Of a DNA stretch of 64,000 bases, positions 12,691 through 28,111 are shown piece by piece. The notes below the pieces were generated by a model that saw only the letters and a list, made by a program, of their open reading frames with translations, did no database searches and had not been told where the DNA came from. This stretch comes from Adineta vaga (Eukaryota > Animalia > Rotifera): contig CP075492.1 in NCBI GenBank assembly GCA_021613535.1, forward strand, positions 10,540,001-10,604,000, written 5' to 3'. Each line of letters begins with the position of its first letter. Position 1 is the first letter of the stretch. Position numbers and translations under genes: made by a program.

Positions 12691-15600
12691 ATGATGATTT
12701 TCAATAGAATTGTTTATATAATACTGATGTGGATGACATTGGGTAAGTTCGACTAATAACAGGTGTAGTTTGTATCTTTTAGAAAGAGAAATTTTATTAA
12801 ATAAATTGCCTCTGGACATTTAAAGGAGGGAAAAAGGATCGTTTTTCAATTTCCGCATTAAGCATATGTATATGAAAAATAATGACAAGTTAATGGGGTT
12901 TTTTCTTCACACTGACCAGTCTATCAAGTGACTAATTCTTAGCTTGCGTCATGATTACACTTAAAGAAAAAAAGGTTCAAGTGCTTTTTGAGACAACAGA
13001 AAGTGAGAGAAAGAAGACTATGATATGTATCTAAAATGTTCATTGAAATTGAATTCTATGGAGATATTCTCTACTAAATAGGTTTGTCATCGACATGTTC
13101 GTTTTCGACATTATTTGATGGTATATGGATTCAACCCGGTTTAAATGATTTAGTAACGATCAATAAAACATGGTTTTCATCGAAAGGAATTTGTTTAAGT
13201 GGACAACAAGATGCGAAAAACAAATATATATACTACAATGAGTAGGTTATATCATCTCTTTGATGACATGAAGTTATTCTCAAATTTGTTTTCTAGACAG
13301 ACAAGATGTAAACGTTGTATACTTTTCATTCCAAGACATTCAAATGCATTGCAATATCGAGAAAGTAAGTTTTTTTTTCTACTACAAATACTCAAGAAGA
13401 AAAGAAAACATCAACTGATCATCATGTCATAATGTATATTAATTATCATCGATCACTATGTACAATGGCATATTCTATTCTCTACTGATGTTCTATGCAT
13501 ACATACATGCAATGTTTCATCTACAAACGATAGACATTAACTTCCGCTAGTGATAATTGAACGGGAATTTGATGTCTTAGACAATACGTCTCTCTTCTTC
13601 TTCTTCTTTTTTTGTTCCTATATTATCACTAATAATTTCTTTCATTCTAGGTGAATGCTTCGATGCCGATGATGATAATGGTCGCATCTGTACTTCCATT
13701 ACACCGGACACAGTATTATATACACTTTTCCGGAGTAAGAGAAAGAATGAAATGTGATTCCTTCGTTGAAAATCATATTCATTAGTAGAAAATGAGAATC
13801 CGTTAGTCTCCTAGGAAAAAGGTCTTATTCCCTAGTGAATGGACGAGACATTGACCGACATGAAATGCTCACTGACCTAAATAAATACAGGAAATGAATG
13901 TTGCTCCCGGCATCATTCAATCATTCTGTCCAAATAAAAGATTAAATTTTGACTGTTTTCTTTCGACATATAGACAATGCTGAATCAATTCCATGTCCAT
14001 TGAATGAATCATGGTATTTTCAAAAAGATCACCAACTATCATCATTCTGTCAACCAAAAGCATTTCATCATTGTCTTTCTACAGATACATTTCAATTATC
14101 CTATAACAATCGATGTCAATCGAAACAAGGTTTATCTTCATTATTCTTGATGTTCTGTTGTAATATTGTCTTATGAAATTCTATAGATATGATCAGTACA
14201 TGTTTTGCTCAATTTTCTGATGGTAATATGAATTATATTATATCTCGAAGTGTTCAATCACAAAAATTTATTTGTTTTGTAAGTTAAATTTCTACTTGAA
14301 ACATTTTTGTTAAATTGTTCAAAATTTAGTCTTATATTAAAACAAAATCTGCTGATGAACACGTTTTACCTAACGAAGTTTACCTATCTCAAGATGAAAC
14401 TTGTCGAGATTTATTTACACGAGAATCAGCTGTTATATTAAAAGTTATTTCAAGTAAATCATTCAAAATTTGAAATATAGATTAAAAAATCGAGGATTTT
14501 TAGATAAACACGTAGAATCTAAAGTTCAAATACCTCATTGGGCACAAGGAATGTGGTTATCTGTTGGAACTAATAGTGTTAACTCAAATCGATTCTACAT
14601 CAATCATACACAACTTCTTATGACAGTGGATGATGATCGAATGATAAAATACGATTTACAATTTGTAAAAGTTTTGTCAAATAGAAGAAAATATGGAATT
14701 AATATTCGTATACGAGCTAAATCCTTAGATCAATGGTAAATATCATCAATGAATGTTAAAATAAAACTTGATTTCTTTTTTTAGTTCATCAACATTTTAT
14801 TGTATTAAATTAATCTATCGTTCGGCGGCAGTAATTGATCTTGCTATAGGTATATTTCATTTTGAATGATCGATTGATTGATGTTGATCAAATAAAGTTT
14901 GCTTAGTTCTTTTTTGCGTGAGAATCATGATATATACATACATACATACTGAGACGATTAAATATTCTTTCAATGAAAACTATTGTAGATCGATGAGAAT
15001 TAGAGTCTATCATCAACTAATTTTAGTATACATATCATTGTAGGATTTGAACAACATCGATGTGAACAGAGTCATCTACACTATACTCTATTTAGTAAGT
15101 CATTTTATTATATCGATTTATGGTAGATGAATATATATTATTAGAATCAAATACGAAATCCAATATTTCCTGTCCACAAAATGGTATATATAATTCATTG
15201 AATACTTATCGATCTTCACTACCTGTCTCTACTTGTTCAACGGGTATTTGGACATTATCAATTGGCTGTGAAATTACTAATACAAGTGAATTAACATTAT
15301 CTTCAACTTGTCGTCATGAAATTGTACCTGATGTACAAGTTATTACATCAATCAATGGTATTTGTCTCGCTTCATGGCGTAGTGATCATCGATTTCAACG
15401 TACACTTGTTGTTTATGAAAAAACTAAAGCATTTTGTTTGGTAAATTTGAAGTTTAAACTTGTATTTTCACTTTTTCATTTATTTTTCTTGCAGATTCAG
15501 CCATTAAAATCAATGACAGCTAGTTGGATACTATCAGAATCGAGTTGTACAAATATTGATTTACTTTCAATTGATGTTGAAAATAGTTTTCGATATTTAT

Positions 15601-15725
15601 CTCATTGTCAAGAAAAGTCGCGTTTATTATTGTCATCTTCCACATCATTATCATTGCATAGAATATCTTATGTCTTGTTTTATTTAACTATGCAAGTACT
15701 AATACATGTAAATGTGATGAAATAA
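12691..15725 (+). CDS. Cys-rich secreted/cell-surface protein of an uncharacterised invertebrate family (DUF7042-7044-like)
   Basis: A signal-peptide exon is followed by CSFSTLFDGIWIQPG...KGIC...RHSNALQYRE...CTSITPDTVLYTLFR...SIPCP, then repeated CP..G/C.A.W units and a hydrophobic C-terminus (TM or GPI signal). About 11-12 exons; internal boundaries are approximate. Confidence 0.65.
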
Positions 15726-15854
15726 ATAAATAATAGACAAAATGAATTGCTATGGAATGTATTTTTAGTTATATTTGAATATAAGAAATCAGGACAGATA
15801 AGATACAGCAAAGAAAAAAGAAGAAGAAAAAAAATCGTCCGTTCATTTGAAGAA

Positions 15855-16928
15855 TTAATCTGAATCTTCATCTTCATCATTACCGCCATCACCATTCTGT
15901 TGCGTTTGTCGTGGTTTGTAATTCGAAAAAATCACTGAAAAATACAAGCAAATGAAAAGAACCTATATAGAATACATGATTTACCCTTTTCGTCTAATAA
16001 CGATCGAGTACTGGGATCATGTGGCAAGATCAAATGATAATTTATTATCTTTATTACGAAGTCGTTTGTCAGCACCTAAGAAATTAACGTTAAGAAAACG
16101 TTTTCGTTTCTCTTGTCCTTACCATTATCTAATAGAAGTTGAACAATATCAGCATGGTTCTTCCAACTAGCTACATGCAATGGCGTGTCGCCAACATTAT
16201 TCTAATTAGATAAAAAGCGCTTGGAAAAAAATATGAGATGAAAAATGAAGATATACCTTTTGATTGATAATTGATAATGAAAGTGGTAATAATAATTTCA
16301 CACATTCCATATCACCAGAATAACATGCCCAATGAAATGGTGTATTTCCTGCTTTGTCAAGACCAAGAACTGAAGCCTATAGAAATTAAATATTCTGAAA
16401 TCTAATTTTACCAAACTATCATTCATTCTTACTTTGTTTGCAAGTGATTCTTGAAGAAATTCGATATTTCCACGTTTCGCTGCGTCATGTAAAGCATTCA
16501 CAAGTTTCTCTGTACTTTCTTCAACTAAATCATAAAATCTCCTTGAAAAAAAGACATTTCATGGATCTTAGAAGCTTCTACCATAATTCTTTGGAATTAA
16601 GCCACCTGTACGATTTTTATTTGTCGTAGCCAAATACCAATCTTTATATTTAATATCATCAGTTACATAAAGAATTTCACCTTCTTCGAAAGATAATTCT
16701 TCTGGAGAACGAGCTAAATAACAAGAAAATCATCCAACAATTTCTTTTCCTATTCAAAACAGATCTTTCTCTCTCTCTCTTACCTGTATAACTATACAAA
16801 GCTTTCACTATCGATACATAACCAGGTTTCTGTAGAACAAATCAAACATTGCCTTTTTATTTTTAACTTTTTTGAAAACTTACAGCTGGTATCGGTGGCG
16901 GAACTCTTGTAGGTCCAATAACACTCAT
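15855..16928 (-). CDS. OSTF1: Osteoclast-stimulating factor 1 (SH3 + ankyrin repeats)
   Basis: Pro-rich N-terminus, SH3 ELSFEEGEILYV...GLIPKNY, ankyrin LHDAAKRGN and DKAGNTPFHWAC, and an acidic C-terminus DEDEDSD*. Confidence 0.92.
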
Positions 16929-17016
16929 CTAGAATAGTAATAATAACAATATCAGATTTATTTTCTCTACGGATCGAAAACATATCACAAGAAGAAAAAA
17001 AAAATGACAAGAACAC

Positions 17017-20000
17017 TCAAGAAACAATCAATGGTTGATGCATATCGAGATTATCAAACAATAACTGTCGTTTTGTTGTACTTCCACGGTTTGGATGTCT
17101 AAATAAATAAATATTTATAATATCAAATTTCTTTTTAACTATTTTCATTTTTACTTGTATAATAATTGAAATATTCCAGTACCAATACGAATTGGAATAC
17201 CCATAATGATACATTCTGATACTCCACAGATCGTATCTTTTTGTCCATGATAAGCAGCATCATATAAATGATCAATGGTACGTTCAAATGAAGCAAGCAT
17301 TAAAACACTTTCTTTCATTTTAGCTAAACCATTTCGAGTCATACCAAGAACTTCACCCTAAATGAACAAACAACAAGTAATGAAATATATCTCTGTCAAA
17401 ACTTACTTTATATGTCATTAAATCCGCTAGAAGCATTACATGTCGAACATCTAAACCAATACCATGTGATGCCATTGTATAAACAATTTCATTAATAATT
17501 GTTGTTCGTGCTGCTTCAATACCCAAACAACGATAGACTTCCATCGTATTATTTGATGTTGTTTCATTGGCATTAACACCTTGTGTACCCATCACATCTC
17601 TCATACCTTCACCTTCAACGAATAGTTTATGTATAGTTCCTTCTTTTTCATCAACTGTTATCACTGCCCGATCAACTGTTGATATACCTTTAACAACAAT
17701 ATTTGGTAATGTTTCTTTATAACGTTTCATTGTATAATACATATTGCCTTTCAATGTATCAGCTACTTCCAAATGTATCATATCCGCTCCAGCTAATGAT
17801 AATTGATTATATTTAACTTTTTTCATTTTTTTATCTTGCACAATAGAATCAATAATTGACATGGGATTTATTTCAAGTTTTAATAAACGTATACGATCAA
17901 GATCAAGTTTGATAGATAGATAACAAGCATCACTTTCATAAACTTCTTCGATATATTGCGAAACTTGACCGAGATAGGTTTTTTCTATACGACCTTTTAC
18001 TTTACGTGCAAAATCTTGATCTAATTCATTGTCTAATGCAGCTGTAATTAACGGAGTAGAAGGAGTTTTAACAGCATTAATAATTTCTTTAATACGTGGA
18101 ACACCAAGAGTAATATTCATAGAGGCAACACCAGCAAAATGAAAAGCTAAAAGAAATAAATACGAACAATAACATTTCAATCCATTTATTTCTCGGAAAT
18201 CCAGCGACATCAACGTAATTACTTCTCGTCTAGAATTGACTTTTTAATACTAACTTTTCAATGTCATTTGTGTTGCAGGTTCACCAATACTTTGTGCACA
18301 AAGTGCTCCAACAGCTGTTCCAGGTTCGAGTCGTGCTCGACCATATTTATATTTACATAATTGAAGAAATTCATAAAGTTGTGATTTTGTACATCGTTCA
18401 ACTTCATAAAGTACATTTGGAACAGCACGCGGTTTTTTATTTGAGCGACTTGTAACATTTGATACACGCTTTCGAGTCGTGCTTGATTTGACTTCTTGTT
18501 CTTGTTCTTTTTCTTCTTCTTCTACGATTTCCTCTTTGATATTCGATGTATCAATCTGGTATCGTTGTCGATATCGATCAATAACGATTGAAGTTTCTTG
18601 AATAAAATCGACTATTTGTTGTTTATATTCTTGTTCCATGATAGAATATTCCTCGTTAACAAGTTCTTGACAAACATAATTATTCATGTCCGTTCCATTC
18701 AATGGATATTCATTATCATAACGATATTTCGCTCGTACATGTTGATAAATTCGGTCATACTCAACTGGTTTATCTTTACCTTCAAGAAAGATCGGATCTA
18801 ATGAATCACCACCATAGGTAAATTGAACAATATCGTCAGTACTAGTTCGTATGGTCATATCATATTGGCAGCATAAATCTTCTAAACATTTGACTAAACG
18901 ACGTTGCATATAACCAGTTTCAGCTGTTTTGACAGCAGTATCAACCAGACCTATAACCATCATAGATATTGATTCATCTACTCATCTTATCGATTCATTT
19001 ACCTTCTCGACCACCCATTGTATGAAAGAAAAATTCCGTAGGTGTTAAACCAGAGTAAAAACTATTTTCCACGAAACCTTTTGCTGCTGGAATTTTAGCT
19101 AAAAGATAAATATTTCTCTCGAAAGAAATCAATATCATTAATAGAAGAAAACATACAATGTTTTTCAAAATGTGGTAATGAACGATCTTCAAATCCATTT
19201 GGTACTCGAGAGCCACTGATAGCTTGTTGACCGACACAAGCAACCATTTGAGAAATGTTGATATTCGATCCTGAACAGAAAAGAAAAAACAACGACAGCA
19301 GTTCAAAAGAATGAAATATCAGAGATTTTACCTTTAGATCCAGAAATAGCCATAATCAGTGGACTGTTACTTGAACGTTGTAATTCTTGTAAACATAATT
19401 TACCCGCTGATTCACGAACGTCAGAAAGTTCCTTCAAAATCAATGCCTAAGAAGAGAGTAAAATGACTTTATGTTCAAAAACTTATGAATTAACTTACTT
19501 CAAGTGTTTGTTCAGGAGAACAACCGGGTTGTAATTGAAGTTTACCTTCTTGTAATTGGCGAATATAATTATTACATTTACTATATCCTTCACTAACTAA
19601 TGAACGTTTTTCTTTCATTAAATTTTCACCAGGAGTAACATCAATTAAACCAATCGAAAAACCACGATTCACTAAAGAACGAAAAAATAAATGACTATTC
19701 TGAAGAAAACGAACATCAAAATTTATACTTAGATAGTAACTAGTCAAACGAGCTAGACGTGCCATTGCTAATGCAGCTGCTGCTTCCGAACAATCTCGTA
19801 AAAGCATATAGAATACATTTGTTTTTCCATTAGCACCTAAGACACTTTTATCAACACAACCGAGAAGAAGTCGACTGTTACGAATAATAATAACTTTAAG
19901 AGAAAAAAAAGACCAAGAAATTCGTTTATAAAAGATTATAATATTTAACTTACATCCATCATTGATACACAGATCTTCTCCTTTACCACAATACGCTTTG

Positions 20001-22630
20001 CCTTTTGTACGTAAATTAATAATATCTTTCGATGAGTTATTCAATCGAAGAATAACATTAAATAATTGTTTGCCTGACCATAACTGACAAGGCTAGAAGA
20101 AGAAGAAGAAGAAGACGAGGAATGTTTCATGAAAACGGAAGTATGAATTCGAATAAGGTATTTACTTTAAGTATAGTTGGTGGTGGTAAATCGATCTTTT
20201 CTAAGCCGTCTTTATTTGTAAGAATCCAAGTTAGTAATTGACAAGCTTTTGATCGATCAAAAAATACATCACGTTGAGTCAATAAATAAGCACCTAAGCA
20301 AAGAATTTTGTTTTCTTATACAATCATCATACACCGAATAATGTGTTGAATATTTTCTATTTGTATTATAAGCTGTGATTTCGTTACTCATATTTATTTT
20401 ATAAAGTAACATGGCGTCTTTTTTCAATCGAAAAATACTGATTTAGTTATTAGTTTCTTCTTAACTAGAGTAAAAAAAGGTTTTCTTCATACCAGTTAAA
20501 AAATCTTGCGTTGCACCAATGATCATTTCTCCATTACGTGGTGTCACCAGATTTGATTTTGTCTAAACAATCAACGTTTGTATAACTAGAAACAATGTCA
20601 TCAATATTACATACTCCCATTAAAATAAGTGCTTCAGCTTTGGCTTCTTCTGTTTGTGGTAAATGGAGATTCATTTCATCTCCATCGAAATCAGCATTGA
20701 ATGGTGAACAAATACATTCATTAAAACGAAATGTTCTATGAGGCATTACTCTTGCAAAGAGAGCCATTATGGAAAGACGATGTAATGACGGTTGTCGATT
20801 AAAAAGAACAACGTCACCATCAATTAAATGTCGTTCAACAATATCACCATACTAAAATGAAAAAGATTATTTATATACGTATGCAAAGAGAGTACTGTTG
20901 AAGAATTTTACACGTAATTTTGCAGCCATATCATTTCGATCTCCATATTTAAGAAATTTTTTATGATCATTTTTTGGATTAAGAATAAAATTGGCACCGG
21001 GATGAACATCGGGTCCATTACGAACAAGTTGACGTATGAATTCAATATTTGTTTTATTAACAAATTCCGGATAAGACATGATTTTTGCTACATGAATCGG
21101 TACTGCCACCTACAGCAATATTAAATTTGCAAAACTCGATGAAAAGATTATATTTTACCTCATCAATACGTAAATTTGGATCGGGAGAAATAACTGTTCG
21201 AGCACTGAAATCAACACGTTTACCTGATAAATTTCCTCGAAAACGACCTTGCTTGCCTTTTAATCGTTGTGCAAATGATCGTATCCATTTTTTTGGTTGC
21301 ATATGTGCTGGAATGCCCGATAGACTACTATTTATATAGAGTGCACATTGTAATTGAAGAAAATCCCATTGTTCAACAAGTTTATCCATTTTCACACCAT
21401 TTAATCGATTTCGTTGAATAACATCATTTAAGAATATAATTTCGCTTAGTTTGATCGTTAAATCGTCTTCATTTCTTTTCAGAAAAGAGATAAGAATAGA
21501 TGCGTAAAGAAATCAGTCGAAGTCACTTACGTTCCAGCACGAAAATCAGATTGTACAGTAGGTCGAATACAAATAGGTGGTACGAGGATTCTTGAGAGAA
21601 TAAAATCACGTGGATGGATGATAGATTCATCAATAAGAAGTAAAGGTAAATCCTATAAACACAAAAAAGAATTTCAATTTGAAATGAAAAACAAAGAATG
21701 TAACAGACCTCTGTTGGAATGCGTTCAAATAATTCCAATACACGAACAGGATTGAGTATTTCTGTATAAGAATTGACTAATGTTGATACTTCTGCATTTC
21801 CTTGTCGAGCAGAATGAAACATTTCATTGATATCATTCAATGCATTATGTTGCCGTTTTTGTGTACGAAATTTATCATGAGCAATTTTCAAAAGAGCACA
21901 TTTAAGAACAGCACCTAATGAATAACTTAAAACATATTTCTTGATCGAATGAAATCATTTCATCTTACCATTTAGTTCACCACAATACGGACAAATTGTT
22001 GATTTTTTGGCTTTCTCATGAACACGTTTTCTCAATGATTTCTTTTGAAGATAACTTAAAACGGGTCGACATAATTGCCGTTGAAATGTCTGTTTCATTT
22101 CTTTCTTTAACATTACACGTGAACATTTCTATACGCAAACTTCATCATTGACTAGATATCTTCAAATAAGTAAACAACAACATACTTTACAAATTGTTTG
22201 TAGAACAACAGTTATCGAACGAAAAAATCCAATATGGAATACAGGTAATTGAAGATCAATATAACCATAATGACCAAGACATTTAGTCACATCTTGATGA
22301 CAAGTTTCACATAAACGTTTACCACCACAAACACCCTACATGAAATGAAATGAGTTGAATGAATATGTAAGAAGACAAATTAGATGAATATTCCATTACT
22401 AATTTAGGATCAAGAACACCGAAAGGTGCTGGAGTACGTGCAGCATCTTGAGAGTATAAATTTTTACTAACAACATGAATATGTGCTTCTTTTTGCATTT
22501 CAAGTGATGAAAAAGGAGCAAATTGAATTTGATTTCTATGAAATAGAACATCTTAGAATTATCTCATAGAAAATTCACTTTCCTACATGACTTTTCCAGT
22601 CTTAACACTTCGATATTGTGTTTTGACCAT
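17017..22630 (-). CDS. POLR3A: RNA polymerase III largest subunit (RPC1)
   Basis: Motifs [45 protein letters not shown], catalytic [34 protein letters not shown] and [11 protein letters not shown]. No CTD heptads. Confidence 0.96.
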
Positions 22631-22822
22631 TTTGAAACCAAGATTATCTGTCTATCAATACTAGTAATATTTGATTTAAATATCTAAAAATAAAAACGAT
22701 CAAAATAATGATGCAACATTTCATTCATCTTACGAAATACAAGCAAAATATAAAATAGGACTATCAATCTAACTTTACTTATTATATCCCCATCACCAGA
22801 AATGAAAAAACATAATAGATAT

Positions 22823-23937
22823 TTATTTATAACCTAGAATTCCATCAAGATAGGAATCTGATCGATAGAATTGAATATTTTTAAAACCAATCTTCTCTAA
22901 CATTGCTTGATATTCAATACATGATCGTTCTCGTCCAGTTGTGGCAATAAGCATATTCAAATCTTGTATATTAACATCCAATGGACCTGTTTTATTATCA
23001 TCTAATAATTTTTCTGCAATTAAGACTGCGCCATTATTTTCTGGTAAAGTTTGATAAATTTTTGTTAGTAAATGTTCACATTGCTCATCAGTCCAATCAT
23101 GTAAAATTCGTCCAAGACCAAACAGATCGACATGAGGTAATGCATCGACAAAGAAGTCACCACTTTGAAAACGAATTCGAGAACGAATATCCGATGAAGT
23201 TTGATCAATACATCGATTTGTATGTTTTTCAATACGTGGAAGATCGAATATAATTGCTTGTAATTGTGAATTAACTTCACATGCTGATATAGCTAAACAT
23301 CCTGTTGCACCACCAAGATCACAAAGTGTTTTAAATTGTTTAAGATTATCGAAATATTTCACAATATTTGGAAAACTAGTTAAACCAAGTCCATGCATAC
23401 CACTAATAAATAATGTTTCTGCATTTTCATCTCGATAATGTGAATCAAATGTAAATATATCTCCTTTGCCTGTATTAAATGCATGTTGCCATTGTGGTTT
23501 ATTCTCACGTATAGCATCACCGAGTGTATTCCAAAGAAGATAAGATGATTGATTGTTATGATTGATATATCCATTTAATGTCGATGGACTCGTGGATACA
23601 AGATATTTTTCACTTAACTTTGTATTAGAATATTTCTTTGTTGTTTTATCGTGTTCAAGTAATTGAAGAGCTACACAAGCGTTAAGAAAACGTTCAAATG
23701 CTAATAGATGTGATAGATTGAGTTTTGTTGCGAGTTCAATTGATGTGAGTGATTGATTGACTAGATGATCAAATAATTTAAATTCAACAGCAGTAAATAA
23801 AACTTTTGAATGACGATATCCATCAATAAGTGAAGATATATAATTTGCATTGGTATTTTCAGAACTCTAAAATGACGTGCAAATTCACCATACAAAGAAA
23901 AAGTATAGCATACTTGTTTTGTTTCCCTTGAAGTCAT
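22823..23937 (-). CDS. SAM-dependent small-molecule O-methyltransferase (ASMT/HIOMT-like)
   Basis: Exon 1 MTSRETKQ (23914-23937), then a 47-nt intron, then an open frame containing LIDGYRHSKVLFTA, DLGGATG, GDFF, LGRILHDW and DLNMLIATTGRER. Confidence 0.88.
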
Positions 23938-24219
23938 ATCTTCAATCTATATCTGAAGAAGAGAAGAAATGGAAACTTTTTCAAAGGATAAATTAATAAA
24001 TGTCATTATTTTATTGAAAGAAAATTTCATCGAAGCGATTAGAAATAGTTTATCTTGTATGAAAAACTGCAGGGAATTAAAAAGTGGTTTTCTTAACAAC
24101 GACAACAAAAACAGGATCTTATCTTCCAAAACGATAAAAAAATTAGTACACTGTTAGGAAAAAGAGTGAGGATATGAGTATATACAAAGACAAACAAAGA
24201 ATGAAAATGAAAGAGATCA

Positions 24220-25385
<1,166 letters not shown>

Positions 25386-25624
25386 TTGAAAGTAGTTCAA
25401 TGATCATGAAGTTCTCTTTTTCCAAAATCTAAAACTATATTCATTTACAAAATAATTTACACTATAAAACAAATCTTTTTTTATTCTTGATCGAGAGATT
25501 CAAAATCATAGTTTTGATGTAAACTGTAATATGTATACGCTGAATCATAGCAAGAGGAAGAGAGAGAAGAACAAATAAATACAATATATGTTTGTATAAG
25601 AACGGGATAAAATAGAATGCTTCG

Positions 25625-27696
25625 TTATTGAATAATATCATATGGAGTATGTAAACCAATCCTTCGATTTGATGCTTGCGGTGCATCATAGGATGATGTA
25701 CAAATCTTTAAATCATCACCAAGTTGAGTAGAGATATCCGAATTAAAGTTACAAACATAAATATGACCTGATAATGGATCAGAATTCATTTGATATTCAA
25801 TCTAAAACAAGAAGAGTAAGTTTTTAACAATGATATACAATGCTATTTACCATATCAGGTCGTTTACATAAGGGTGTCAATGCACATACTAATGTTTGTT
25901 TATTAAATGAACAGTGTGTTACTGGATGTGATTGAGGATTCATATGCCATAATGAATGTGGATGCATTCGTCGATCCCTATGACATATCAGATAAGATAC
26001 ATTCTATTGATATTCGTATGGAAAAAAATTCTCACCAAAGTCGAATGAAACCACGCATATCAGTACTTGCTAATTTCCATGTATCCATTTGAAGTGTTGT
26101 AATTGTTGAAAAATGATTATAAAAATGTTGCACAGCTCCATCTTTTTGTCTTCGATCGAATATGCTTATTTGTGAATTATCATAAGCCACAATAAATTCG
26201 TTCGTAGGACATTTATCAGCTCGAATAAGATGAACATTAGCCGGAAGATATTTATAAGTTGTTGAAACAATATTACAACGACCACTTTGTAAATCAAATA
26301 GTTTAATTTCATTTTCTACACCAATTATTGCTAATGGTTCATCATTATGAATATCTAATGGTATTTTTTGAATATAATCAGATACAAATGTTGAATAGAA
26401 TGATAAACGATGGCTGAGATTTAGTAATGAAATACACCAAAATGATTTCCTAGCAGCAATGATTGAGACAGGTACAGAATGATGACTAGACATACAGAAT
26501 GATAATATATGATCGTTGAAATTCGTGGAGAAATCAAGTTCTTGAAATTCAAGATCTGTGTCAGCCTAAATAGGAAAGAGAAGGATGAAAATGAATGTGT
26601 ACATCCAACAAGAACGTATTCATAATTTTCTTACCTTTTCAAAATTCCATACACTAAATTTTGATCGACTAGCAGAACATAATAGTTGATCATCATTTGA
26701 AATATCTACAATTGGTAATGATGTTAATCGATGAGTATAACGTGGTTTATTTCCAATATCTTTTGTCCAAATTTCTAAAAGACCATTATCATGTACAGCA
26801 TAGAGATCATTTTTCAAAAATCCCACTGATTTTACACTAGAAACATTTCTATTTTCATCACCATCTGCTGATTCATAGATAATATCTGGTGTATCTAACT
26901 GTTCATTATCACCATCATCATTATGATCAGTTGTCTTTAAAATATCTTCTATCGACCAAGTACGTATGATACCTGTTGAATAACCAGCAACAATTGTTGT
27001 TTGATTATTATTTGCACATGTTAAAACAACACCTAAACGATATGTTAGCTTTGTTGTACGACATTGATGATTTTTAAAATTTTGTGCTAATTGTCGATTG
27101 GATAGTACTGTTTCTTTTACATGATTTTTCCAAGTATCATCATATTTCTTGGCCGATTTATCAAGATGTAATCGTTTGTATAAATTATACCATAATAGTT
27201 CATCACATGACAATGTATACCATGCTTTACAGACTTGTAAACATGAATAAAGATCTTGAATTGATAGAGTATCAAAGATGTTCAAAGCTATTTCACGCGG
27301 TAAAGAGACATTAAAAAATGGTACATCAGTTGACTCGTCAATATCACGTATTAATTCATCAAGTAATGTTAAATTTGATGTTTTTAGCTTTTTCGAAGGT
27401 GGTGGCTCAGTAATGGATGATTTTTTTACAGATGATGACGAAATGTTTGTGGCAATGAATGTTCCTATTCCAATTGTAAATGAAGTATTATTTGTTGTTG
27501 TTTGTAATGAAAGAGTTAATTCTGATGGTGGAGGAATCGGTGTTTGACATTCAGATGAATTTTTACAGTTCGTACCTAAACGACGGAGATCACCTATTGC
27601 AGTCTGTGAAGTCTCATAGACGGCTTTAACTTCAGTTGATTTATCTTTGGAAATCTCTTCTTGCCAAGAATGACGAAATACATCTAATGATTCCAT
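25625..27696 (-). CDS. FBXW8: F-box/WD40 protein, FBXW8-like
   Basis: MESLDVFRHSWQEEI and LLDELIRDIDE..DVPFFNVSLPREIALNIF resemble the FBXW8 N-terminus and F-box. WD-like ITTLQMDTWKLAS is present. Confidence 0.8.
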
Positions 27697-28111
27697 ATTT
27701 GACAATTACTCGATTAGATGATCTAATTTCTTGTACTCGAGAATCGAGATTCGAGAAGAGAAGTCAAGTCAATGCAATGAGTTGAAAGTTGAAACATCAA
27801 GTCTTTCAATAGTTAGTCGATTATTTAAGCAATAAAAATATTCTTTTTAAACTCTATAAATAAATAGTAAGTTGAATATTATTTCTTGATTTTTTAATGG
27901 ATAAATTAATTTATTTTTGTTATAGACATTACTATTTTTAAGAGAAAAAAAAACAATGATAGTTGGCGCTAGTGTTCGGTTAGAATCGATGATGATCCTG
28001 AACTATTGTTTTAATTTGATTTTTGACAGAGATATAATGCATGCATACAAACAAACATTCTTTTAAATAGAGAATCAGTAATTGCTTCGTGAGAAGAATA
28101 ACTTGATTTTA

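What the first reader, a model, noticed from the sequence alone, without database searches (positions are those of the whole stretch)
15855..27696. Candidate five-gene polycistronic operon (FBXW8>Rab39>O-methyltransferase>POLR3A>OSTF1) resolved by SL trans-splicing
Seen: five functionally unrelated genes lie on the minus strand with stop-to-ATG gaps of 239, 282, 192 and 88 bp. The gaps follow the order stop - AATAAA - U-rich tract - YAG acceptor - short UTR - ATG. Rab39 has AATAAA at 25480-85 and AG at 25429-30; the methyltransferase has 24010-15 and 23953-54; OSTF1 has 16957-62 and 16929-30. POLR3A has AG at 22684-85, with AATAAA overlapping the upstream stop. No comparable pyrimidine-rich acceptor precedes the first gene, FBXW8, which has a ~3-kb upstream gap. 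Established: nematode and tunicate operons are built this way, and spliced-leader trans-splicing is known in bdelloid rotifers. Inference: one promoter drives a polycistronic pre-mRNA. Caveat: a GTAAG at 22729-33 could make the POLR3A acceptor an ordinary cis 5' UTR intron.
Basis: partly seen in the sequence, partly recalled or inferred. Interest (0 to 1): 0.85.

Follow-up and report, generated by a model that had tools for sequence, protein, structure and literature searches.

The report
Candidate spliced-leader operon in bdelloid rotifer
Five unrelated genes packed head-to-tail in the rotifer Adineta vaga look like a worm- or sea-squirt-style operon, kept across bdelloid rotifers and backed by a two-gene RNA from a related species, but the RNA test in A. 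vaga itself could not be run.

Summary

The window is Adineta vaga chromosome 3. The genome carries 58 copies of the bdelloid spliced-leader (SL) RNA gene.

- **Conservation.** The five-gene order is kept in two Rotaria species and in several uncultured bdelloids. A pyrimidine-rich acceptor, usually TTTYAG followed by AT, is conserved at three of the four junctions and less regularly before the methyltransferase.
- **POLR3A>OSTF1.** The spacer is 54-95 nt in four species, and ATTCTAG|ATGAGT never varies.
- **RNA evidence.** A contig from a published metatranscriptome carries an intron-free Rab39 and an uninterrupted methyltransferase reading frame, joined by their 100-nt spacer. That is a two-gene RNA from another bdelloid.
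- **Duplicate region.** On chromosome 6 the FBXW8 coding sequence has decayed, but its promoter block and the Rab39 acceptor survive.
- **Against one promoter.** The MT>POLR3A gap ranges from 97 to 1422 bp, and four species share a block there that looks like a transcription-factor site.

My reading is an operon, probably hybrid or in two parts.

The scan had already flagged two other candidate SL operons in this genome (s1-489416, s1-498426).

The parts
27956..27973 (-). Conserved upstream motif ACTAGCGCCAACTATCAT, 276 nt before the FBXW8 ATG. Candidate promoter or insulator-type site of the first gene.
   Evidence: Same core (TAGCGCCA.CTAT) at -161 to -276 in L026, L030 and L047/48.
25625..27696 (-).
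   Evidence: ORF pieces. Pfam F-box-like 8.6e-15. Orthologs at 53-72% identity in six loci.
25386..25624 (-). Junction 1, 239 nt. AATAAA 25485-25480. Acceptor TTTTAG with AG at 25430-25429, 43 nt before the Rab39 ATG.
   Evidence: TTTYAG|ATTT acceptor kept in 5 species. In L047 the gap is 63 nt with AG|ATG.
24220..25385 (-). Gene 2: Rab39 (cluster copy), 6 exons.
23938..24219 (-). Junction 2, 282 nt. AATAAA 24015-24010. Acceptor TCTTCAG with AG at 23954-23953, 15 nt before the MT ATG.
   Evidence: The orthologous spacer is present inside RNA contig L038.
22823..23937 (-). Gene 3: ASMT-like O-methyltransferase (A. vaga I4U23_014124), 2 exons. Probably of bacterial origin.
   Evidence: 100% to the A. 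vaga protein; every named non-rotifer relative is bacterial, at about 45%. Pfam.
22631..22822 (-). Junction 3, 192 nt. AATAAA overlaps the MT stop. Conserved block about 22737-22705 containing GAAATGTTGCATCAT. Acceptor AG at 22685-22684, 53 nt before the POLR3A ATG.
   Evidence: Acceptor kept in 7 species. Block kept in 4 species, and in the three long-gap species it stays near the acceptor while the gap grows to 1422 bp.
17017..22630 (-). Gene 4: POLR3A (largest subunit of RNA polymerase III), many exons.
16929..17016 (-). Junction 4, 88 nt. AATAAA 16962-16957. Acceptor ATTCTAG with AG at 16930-16929, directly abutting the OSTF1 ATG.
   Evidence: The spacer aligns in 4 species, with invariant ATTCTAG|ATGAGT and AAAAT.AA. 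AATAAA sits 19-28 nt before the AG.
15855..16928 (-). Gene 5: OSTF1 (SH3 plus ankyrin), 8 exons.

Best explanation
This is a conserved bdelloid gene cluster that works as a spliced-leader operon, probably a hybrid or two-part one.

Transcription starting upstream of the FBXW8-like gene runs on through Rab39 and the methyltransferase. Each downstream mRNA is released by cleavage and polyadenylation of the upstream message, and by trans-splicing of the 23-nt bdelloid SL onto a pyrimidine-rich AG acceptor (TTTYAG followed by AT at most junctions) 0-53 nt before its ATG.

POLR3A and OSTF1 are coupled in the same way across an 88-nt spacer. There the poly(A) signal lies 28 nt before an AG that abuts the ATG, as in sea-squirt operons.

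POLR3A probably also has its own promoter or regulatory block inside the 192-nt gap. If so, the five genes need not all depend on one promoter.

- Shown: the anatomy, its conservation, SL genes in this genome, and a cis-spliced Rab39-MT RNA in another bdelloid.
- Inferred: SL addition at these four acceptors in A. vaga, and the position of the promoters.
For: 1. The genome is A. vaga and holds 58 SL-plus-GT donor sites against 0 for the control. The SL sequence is confirmed in PMC3795323. [quoted passage not shown]

2. The order FBXW8>Rab39>MT>POLR3A>OSTF1 is kept in Rotaria magnacalcarata, L029 and L033. Rotaria sp. Silwood1 keeps the first four genes within the locus fetched. Parts of the order are kept in L011, L039, L065 and L116.

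3. Acceptors are conserved at each junction, and the whole J4 spacer is conserved.

4. L038 carries a complete Rab39 lacking all 5 introns, a 100-nt spacer (AATAAA, 17 nt, TTTCAG, AA, ATG) and a complete, uninterrupted MT reading frame.
- Its sample, IMG 3300002344, is one of six DNase-treated, rRNA-depleted metatranscriptomes (PMC5029510 and PMC4796919).
- Its spacer shares GATCAATC.AGCTT with the genomic spacers of L029 and L039.

5. The duplicated (ohnolog) region on chromosome 6 keeps only Rab39.
- In front of it lie the FBXW8 proximal promoter block (..CCAATTCGAATAAAG..CACGTGAGA), 794 nt between the relic FBXW8 ATG and the Rab39 ATG, and the TTTCAG|ATTTT acceptor.
- In the L041 group the same block lies 90 nt before the Rab39 ATG.

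6. L114 shows the SL joined to an mRNA of that Rab39 paralog.

7. Genome annotators fused FBXW8 with Rab39 in five Rotaria assemblies.
Against: - No RNA from A. vaga could be examined.
- SL addition is shown only for the Rab39 paralog of another species, and SL trans-splicing is common in bdelloids whether or not a gene sits in an operon.
- Polymerase II normally reads past poly(A) sites, so one two-gene contig from total RNA does not prove that the downstream mRNA is made from that precursor.
- J3 varies from 97 to 1422 bp and holds a conserved block in A. vaga, both Rotaria and L033. That fits an independent POLR3A promoter.
- The proximal CACGTG block is not kept in the A. vaga chromosome 3 copy itself.
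- The genome-wide excess of AATAAA-N(10-30)-TTYTAG|ATG is modest: 252 against 154 for the control.
Confidence: 0.5

Rival explanations
1. It is a single five-gene operon exactly. One promoter upstream of 27.7 kb drives one precursor, and SL trans-splicing resolves it at four acceptors.
For: Same evidence as the best explanation. In addition, species with short J3 gaps (L011 109 nt, L039 97 nt, L029 135 nt) lack the conserved J3 block. L047/48 join Rab39 to POLR3A across about 210 nt with an acceptor 14 nt before the ATG.
Against: In Rotaria and L033 the J3 gap is 578-1422 bp, far beyond usual operon spacing. A block containing TTGCATCA is kept next to the acceptor there, and A. vaga has the block too. 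No RNA spanning J3 was found.
Confidence: 0.2
2. These are five ordinary genes in a compact genome. Each has its own short promoter lying in the 3' end of its neighbour, and each pre-mRNA is trans-spliced on its own. Read-through RNA is a by-product, and the gene order is kept simply because local order is generally kept in bdelloids.
For: The chromosome 6 duplicate is collinear with the window well beyond the cluster (window 41-35 kb and 15-10 kb). So local order is conserved in general. SL trans-splicing affects more than half of bdelloid mRNAs. Rab39 is still expressed as a lone gene in its paralog.
Against: - J4 (54-95 nt), J1 in L047 (63 nt) and J2 in L038 (100 nt) put AATAAA 17-28 nt before the acceptor, leaving no spacer for a promoter.
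- After FBXW8 decayed on chromosome 6, what survived upstream of Rab39 is the FBXW8 promoter block, not a block in the J1 spacer.
- The cis-spliced two-gene RNA L038.
Confidence: 0.25
3. The acceptors are the 3' ends of ordinary cis introns in 5' UTRs, with small non-coding first exons upstream.
For: GTAAG at 22733-22729 lies 44 nt before the AG, which would make a bdelloid-sized intron.
Against: The GTAAG aligns with ATAAT in L033 and with no GT in L026 and L030, so no donor is conserved. At J4 and at L047's J1 the AG abuts the ATG only 19-28 nt after AATAAA. L114 shows the SL, not a cis exon, on an mRNA of the Rab39 paralog.
Confidence: 0.05

Closest known systems
Ciona / Oikopleura (tunicate) SL operons
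   Same: A single SL type is known. Unrelated housekeeping genes sit head-to-tail, with little or no intercistronic region. Here AATAAA lies 17-28 nt before an AG that abuts or nearly abuts the next ATG (J4 in four species, J1 in L047, J2 in L038).
   Different: The phylum differs, and the SL has a different sequence and probably a separate origin. J1-J3 in A. vaga are longer (192-282 nt), with 15-53 nt 5' UTRs. Poly(A) sites were not mapped here.
Caenorhabditis elegans operons, including hybrid operons with internal promoters
   Same: Same-strand clusters of unrelated genes, conserved in order, with gaps of roughly 100-300 nt between the poly(A) signal and the acceptor. A possible internal promoter before POLR3A would match a hybrid operon.
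   Different: Nematodes use a dedicated SL2 family for downstream genes, plus a Ur element. No second functional SL class is known in bdelloids. Variant SL gene copies exist in this genome but their use was not tested.
Chaetognath operons (Paraspadella gotoi, PMC12460157)
   Same: Chaetognaths are gnathiferan-related, with widespread SL trans-splicing and operons defined as genes less than 250 bp apart with SL evidence. There is no operon-specific SL.
   Different: That case rests on genome-wide RNA-seq. Here the evidence is one locus, comparative data and a single RNA contig.

Membership tests
SL-resolved metazoan operon | Two or more same-strand genes separated by short gaps | tested here: met
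   Gaps of 239, 282, 192 and 88 nt.
SL-resolved metazoan operon | The organism has SL RNA genes and performs SL trans-splicing | tested here: met
   58 SL-plus-GT sites in the window's genome against 0 for the control. Gene structure seen. SL found on a bdelloid mRNA contig, L114. Literature.
SL-resolved metazoan operon | Mature mRNAs of the downstream genes carry the SL at the acceptor before the ATG | tested here: inconclusive
   Seen only for the Rab39 paralog of another species. No SL-bearing contig for MT, POLR3A or OSTF1.
SL-resolved metazoan operon | A polycistronic precursor RNA spans the junctions | tested here: inconclusive
   Met for Rab39>MT in another bdelloid: L038, a cis-spliced metatranscriptome contig. 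Not tested in A. vaga, and no RNA was found across J1, J3 or J4.
SL-resolved metazoan operon | Promoter upstream of the first gene only | tested here: inconclusive
   Conserved blocks lie upstream of FBXW8 and are retained before Rab39 in the duplicate. But a conserved block in J3 suggests an internal promoter.
SL-resolved metazoan operon | Gene order conserved among related species | tested here: met
   Two Rotaria species, L029 and L033, plus partial loci. Caveat: flanking order is also conserved in the duplicate.
Tunicate-type operon (no intercistronic region) | The poly(A) site of the upstream gene coincides with the acceptor of the downstream gene | not testable with these tools
   The sequence is compatible: AATAAA lies 19-28 nt before AG|ATG at J4. 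The cleavage site needs 3' end reads.
Nematode-type operon (SL2) | A specialised SL is used for downstream genes | not tested
   Variant SL gene copies, such as a C-to-A change at SL position 10, exist. Their usage is unknown.

The most novel reading that the evidence does not exclude
Bdelloid rotifers possess tunicate-like SL operons, and such operons serve as landing pads for horizontally acquired genes. A promoter-less bacterial O-methyltransferase was captured between Rab39 and POLR3A. It has since been expressed by read-through transcription plus SL trans-splicing, and it gained an intron in most lineages.
Probability: 0.3. Interest if true: 0.85.

Novelty: new member of a known kind. Interest (0 to 1): 0.68.

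Why it matters
In the papers I could search, operons have not been described in Rotifera. A 2021 methods paper states this explicitly (PMC7986045).

- A confirmed bdelloid operon would add another lineage in which SL trans-splicing and polycistronic transcription occur together. That bears on the long-standing question of whether SL trans-splicing predisposes genomes to evolve operons.
- The locus offers a natural experiment. One duplicate keeps the five-gene cluster. The other has lost the first gene yet kept its promoter in front of the second.
- A probably bacterial gene sits in the middle of the cluster. That makes testable the idea that SL operons help foreign, promoter-less genes become expressed in the animals best known for horizontal gene uptake.

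Tried and rejected
1. **RNA reads.** I made no further attempt, and read laying could not be used without run ids.

2. **Duplicate cluster within the genome.** MT, POLR3A and FBXW8 have no second copy, so only Rab39 could be compared.

3. **SL on Rab39.** L114 at first looked like SL evidence for the cluster's Rab39. Residue comparison shows it is the chromosome 6 type of paralog. It therefore supports use of the acceptor only indirectly.

4. **L115.** This is a chimeric or aberrant contig and was not used.

5. **L077, L052, L060.** These are paralog-type genomic loci, not the genomic counterpart of L038.

6. **OSTF1 and MT hits.** Their N-termini show no SL-encoded peptide, for example LITTYQE.

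7. **Contigs that could not be fetched.** Two spliced OSTF1 proteins lie on JGI contigs of 4375 bp (P0356) and 1953 bp (P0266). Either might be a POLR3A-OSTF1 transcript or a merge with the convergent neighbour.

8. **J3 block.** It is not a common genome motif: 8 copies.

9. **Genome-wide motif count.** AATAAA-N(10-30)-TTYTAG|ATG gives only a 1.6-fold excess over the control.

10. **Spliced models.** Exons were searched one by one by reference, and full-length proteins came only from database hits or from RNA contig L038.


Full report
**What is there**

The window has about 30% G+C and is chromosome 3, positions 10,540,001-10,604,000, of a 100.8-Mb, six-contig genome. The methyltransferase (MT) in the stretch is 100% identical to Adineta vaga protein I4U23_014124.

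There are five genes with stop-to-ATG gaps of 239, 282, 192 and 88 nt. Each gap has an AATAAA, and each has a pyrimidine-rich AG 43, 15, 53 and 0 nt before the next ATG.

Pfam and source names confirm four identities:
- an F-box protein, whose propeller hit is weak, so the name FBXW8 is unverified;
- Rab39;
- an O-methyltransferase with its dimerisation domain;
- an Rpb1-type polymerase.

For OSTF1 the name and domains come from orthologs; its own exons match them at 87-98%.

**The machinery exists**

The published rotifer SL is GGCTTATTACAACTTACCAAGAG (PMC3795323). Followed by GT, it occurs 58 times in this genome within two mismatches, against 0 for the reversed control. Many copies lie in head-to-head pairs about 156 bp apart. 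More than half of bdelloid transcripts are reported to carry it (PMC1925144).

**RNA reads could not be used**

The decisive test in A. vaga remains undone.

**Conservation**

I used the MT exon by reference to find relatives and fetched the contigs that encode them.

- The order FBXW8>Rab39>MT>POLR3A>OSTF1 is kept in Rotaria magnacalcarata (L030/31), an uncultured bdelloid with 49% G+C (L029), and another uncultured bdelloid (L033-37).
- Rotaria sp. Silwood1 (L026-28) keeps FBXW8>Rab39>MT>POLR3A; the fetched loci end inside POLR3A.
- Parts of the order are kept in L011, L039, L065 and L116.
- Annotators of five Rotaria assemblies merged FBXW8 and Rab39 into a single 839-865-residue model.

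Junction by junction:

| Junction | Gap across species | Acceptor | Other conserved features |
|---|---|---|---|
| J1, FBXW8>Rab39 | 63-330 nt | TTTYAG&#124;ATTT in five species; in L047 the gap is 63 nt, with AATAAA 24 nt before TTTTTAG&#124;ATG | none noted |
| J2, Rab39>MT | 100-457 nt | AG 2-15 nt before the ATG in A. vaga, L029 and L038 | AATAAA 17-57 nt upstream of the AG |
| J3, MT>POLR3A | 97-1422 nt | TTTYAG or TTCTAG, then AT, in seven species | block of about 35 nt (see below) |
| J4, POLR3A>OSTF1 | 54-95 nt | ATTCTAG&#124;ATGAGT invariant in four species | AAAAT.AA signal 19-28 nt upstream; the spacer aligns across species although the neighbouring OSTF1 intron visibly does not |

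**The J3 block**

A. vaga, both Rotaria species and L033 share a block containing GAAAT(A/G)TTGCATCAT, 20-55 nt before the acceptor. In the three long-gap species it stays near the acceptor, not the MT stop. It is absent from L011, L039 and L029. It occurs only 8 times in the genome.

From my own knowledge, not tested here, its core TTGCATCA resembles a C/EBP-ATF composite site. That argues against a conserved cis intron.

**A two-gene RNA**

Contig L038 (JGI24217J29970_1059418, 1944 nt) holds three parts in order:
- a complete Rab39 of the cluster type with all five introns absent; every genomic locus examined has them;
- a 100-nt spacer reading AATAAA, 17 nt, TTTCAG, AA, ATG;
- a complete, uninterrupted MT reading frame.

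Its spacer shares GATCAATC.AGCTT with the genomic spacers of L029 and L039, so it is collinear and not a chimera.

Its sample, IMG 3300002344, is the 'N_134min_Aerobic' point of an activated-sludge bioreactor series (PMC5029510). IDs 3300002341-46 are the six DNase-treated, rRNA-depleted, stranded metatranscriptomes of Oyserman et al. (PMC4796919).

L038 is therefore RNA. It is a cis-spliced transcript that still joins Rab39 and MT, from a bdelloid living in that reactor. Because total RNA was sequenced, it may be a precursor and not a stable message.

**The duplicated region as a natural experiment**

Rab39 has a second copy at chromosome 6, about 5,302,400-5,303,300 (I4U23_028929). That region is collinear with the window on both sides, matching window 41-35 kb and 15-10 kb. 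It lacks FBXW8, MT, POLR3A and OSTF1.

Upstream of this Rab39, three things survive:
- the proximal promoter block of FBXW8, ..ATATTTTAATTGC..CCAATTCGAATAAAG..CACGTGAGA, which aligns well with Rotaria and L033;
- the first ten or so FBXW8 codons, followed by about 0.75 kb of decayed sequence;
- a TTTCAG|ATTTT acceptor 61 nt before the ATG.

In a second lineage (L041, L045, L046) the same block, CCAATTCGAACAAAG..CACGTGAGG, lies only 90 nt before the Rab39 ATG. L041 comes from the same sample as L048, which carries the FBXW8>Rab39>POLR3A cluster.

A metatranscriptome contig of this paralog type (L114) begins with GCTTATTACAACTTACCAAGAG joined to the 5' UTR.

The simplest reading is that Rab39 has always been transcribed from the FBXW8 promoter. 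When FBXW8 died, the promoter was kept and the dead gene became an outron.

Caveat: the chromosome 3 copy in A. vaga has lost the CACGTG core. It keeps instead a more distal motif, ACTAGCGCCAACTAT, which it shares with Rotaria and L047.

**The methyltransferase**

Beyond rotifers (53-70% identity), every named relative in the top 120 hits is bacterial, at about 45% identity: Acidobacteria, Planctomycetes and similar. The gene is single-copy in A. vaga.

In L047/48, Rab39 is followed directly by POLR3A with no MT. A paralog lies beside polyketide-synthase-like genes in L032.

So a probably foreign gene sits inside the cluster. It was either inserted into a Rab39>POLR3A junction or lost from one. 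I could not root the comparison to decide which.

**Weighing**

- Co-transcription is well supported for FBXW8>Rab39 by evolutionary evidence, and for Rab39>MT by RNA in a relative.
- For POLR3A>OSTF1 it is strongly suggested by anatomy.
- MT>POLR3A is the weak link.
- SL addition at these particular acceptors in A. vaga is inferred, not shown.
- A genome-wide count of AATAAA-N(10-30)-TTYTAG|ATG gives 252 against 154 for the control, which is only mild support for a general class.

**Literature and earlier notes**

A 2021 paper states that operons have not been reported in rotifers (PMC7986045). My searches for bdelloid or Adineta together with operon or polycistronic terms found no such report. 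The chaetognath genome paper lists rotifers only in passing among lineages with trans-splicing and operonic transcription.

Earlier agents of this scan reported two other RNA-supported candidate operons in this same genome. I did not test those.

**Method note**

Exons were searched one by one by reference.

Noticed in passing
window 22823-23937 (-); L047:3940-4170; L032:1-10921: The O-methyltransferase has only bacterial named relatives outside rotifers (about 45% identity). It is missing from the otherwise identical cluster in L047/48. It has a paralog next to polyketide-synthase-like genes in L032. This points to a likely horizontal acquisition sitting inside an operon-like cluster.
   Followed up: partly
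G000:C6:5301490-5302365 (L120/L121): A relic of the FBXW8 promoter and its first codons, followed by about 0.75 kb of decayed sequence, lies upstream of the duplicated Rab39. The relic keeps the ancestral CACGTGAGA block better than the intact chromosome 3 gene does.
   Followed up: yes
G000, e.g. C1:2551158-2551338 (L001/L002): SL RNA genes are mostly arranged as head-to-head pairs about 156 bp apart. About ten copies carry a variant leader with a C-to-A change at SL position 10, often paired with a canonical copy. Whether the variants are used is unknown.
   Followed up: no
window 15099-15857: A plus-strand gene ends at 15722-15725, only about 130 nt from the OSTF1 stop on the other strand. 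The 3' UTRs of these convergent genes probably overlap. Assemblers could therefore merge their transcripts.
   Followed up: no
window 24150-24222 (-); L026, L029, L030, L033, L114: The Rab39 3' UTR has a motif conserved in both paralogs and all species examined. It reads TAAT.ATCTCTTT just after the stop, then (C/A)AACAGTG(T/C)A about 60 nt later. It may be a regulatory RNA element.
   Followed up: no
window 22705-22737 (-): A conserved block lies upstream of the POLR3A acceptor and contains TTGCATCA, which resembles a C/EBP-ATF composite site. There are only 8 exact copies of the 15-mer in the genome.
   Followed up: partly
L011:135-200, L029:10001-10081, L038:787-840, L039:193-240: In other bdelloids the methyltransferase starts with a basic 15-27-residue extension that looks like a mitochondrial presequence. 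A. vaga has only MTSRETKQ. L029 and the L038 lineage lack the intron that the other species have after this first exon.
   Followed up: no
L115:1-960: This metatranscriptome contig joins the end of an unrelated 303-residue ORF to the middle of Rab39 exon 3. It is probably an assembly chimera.
   Followed up: no
proteins P0356, P0266, P0358-P0360: Spliced OSTF1 proteins lie on JGI contigs of 4375 and 1953 bp, much longer than an OSTF1 message. Some Rotaria annotations fall in the OSTF1 protein cluster at 275-589 residues, longer than OSTF1 itself. One, read in full, is instead the start of POLR3A with no OSTF1 part; the others were not read.
   Followed up: no
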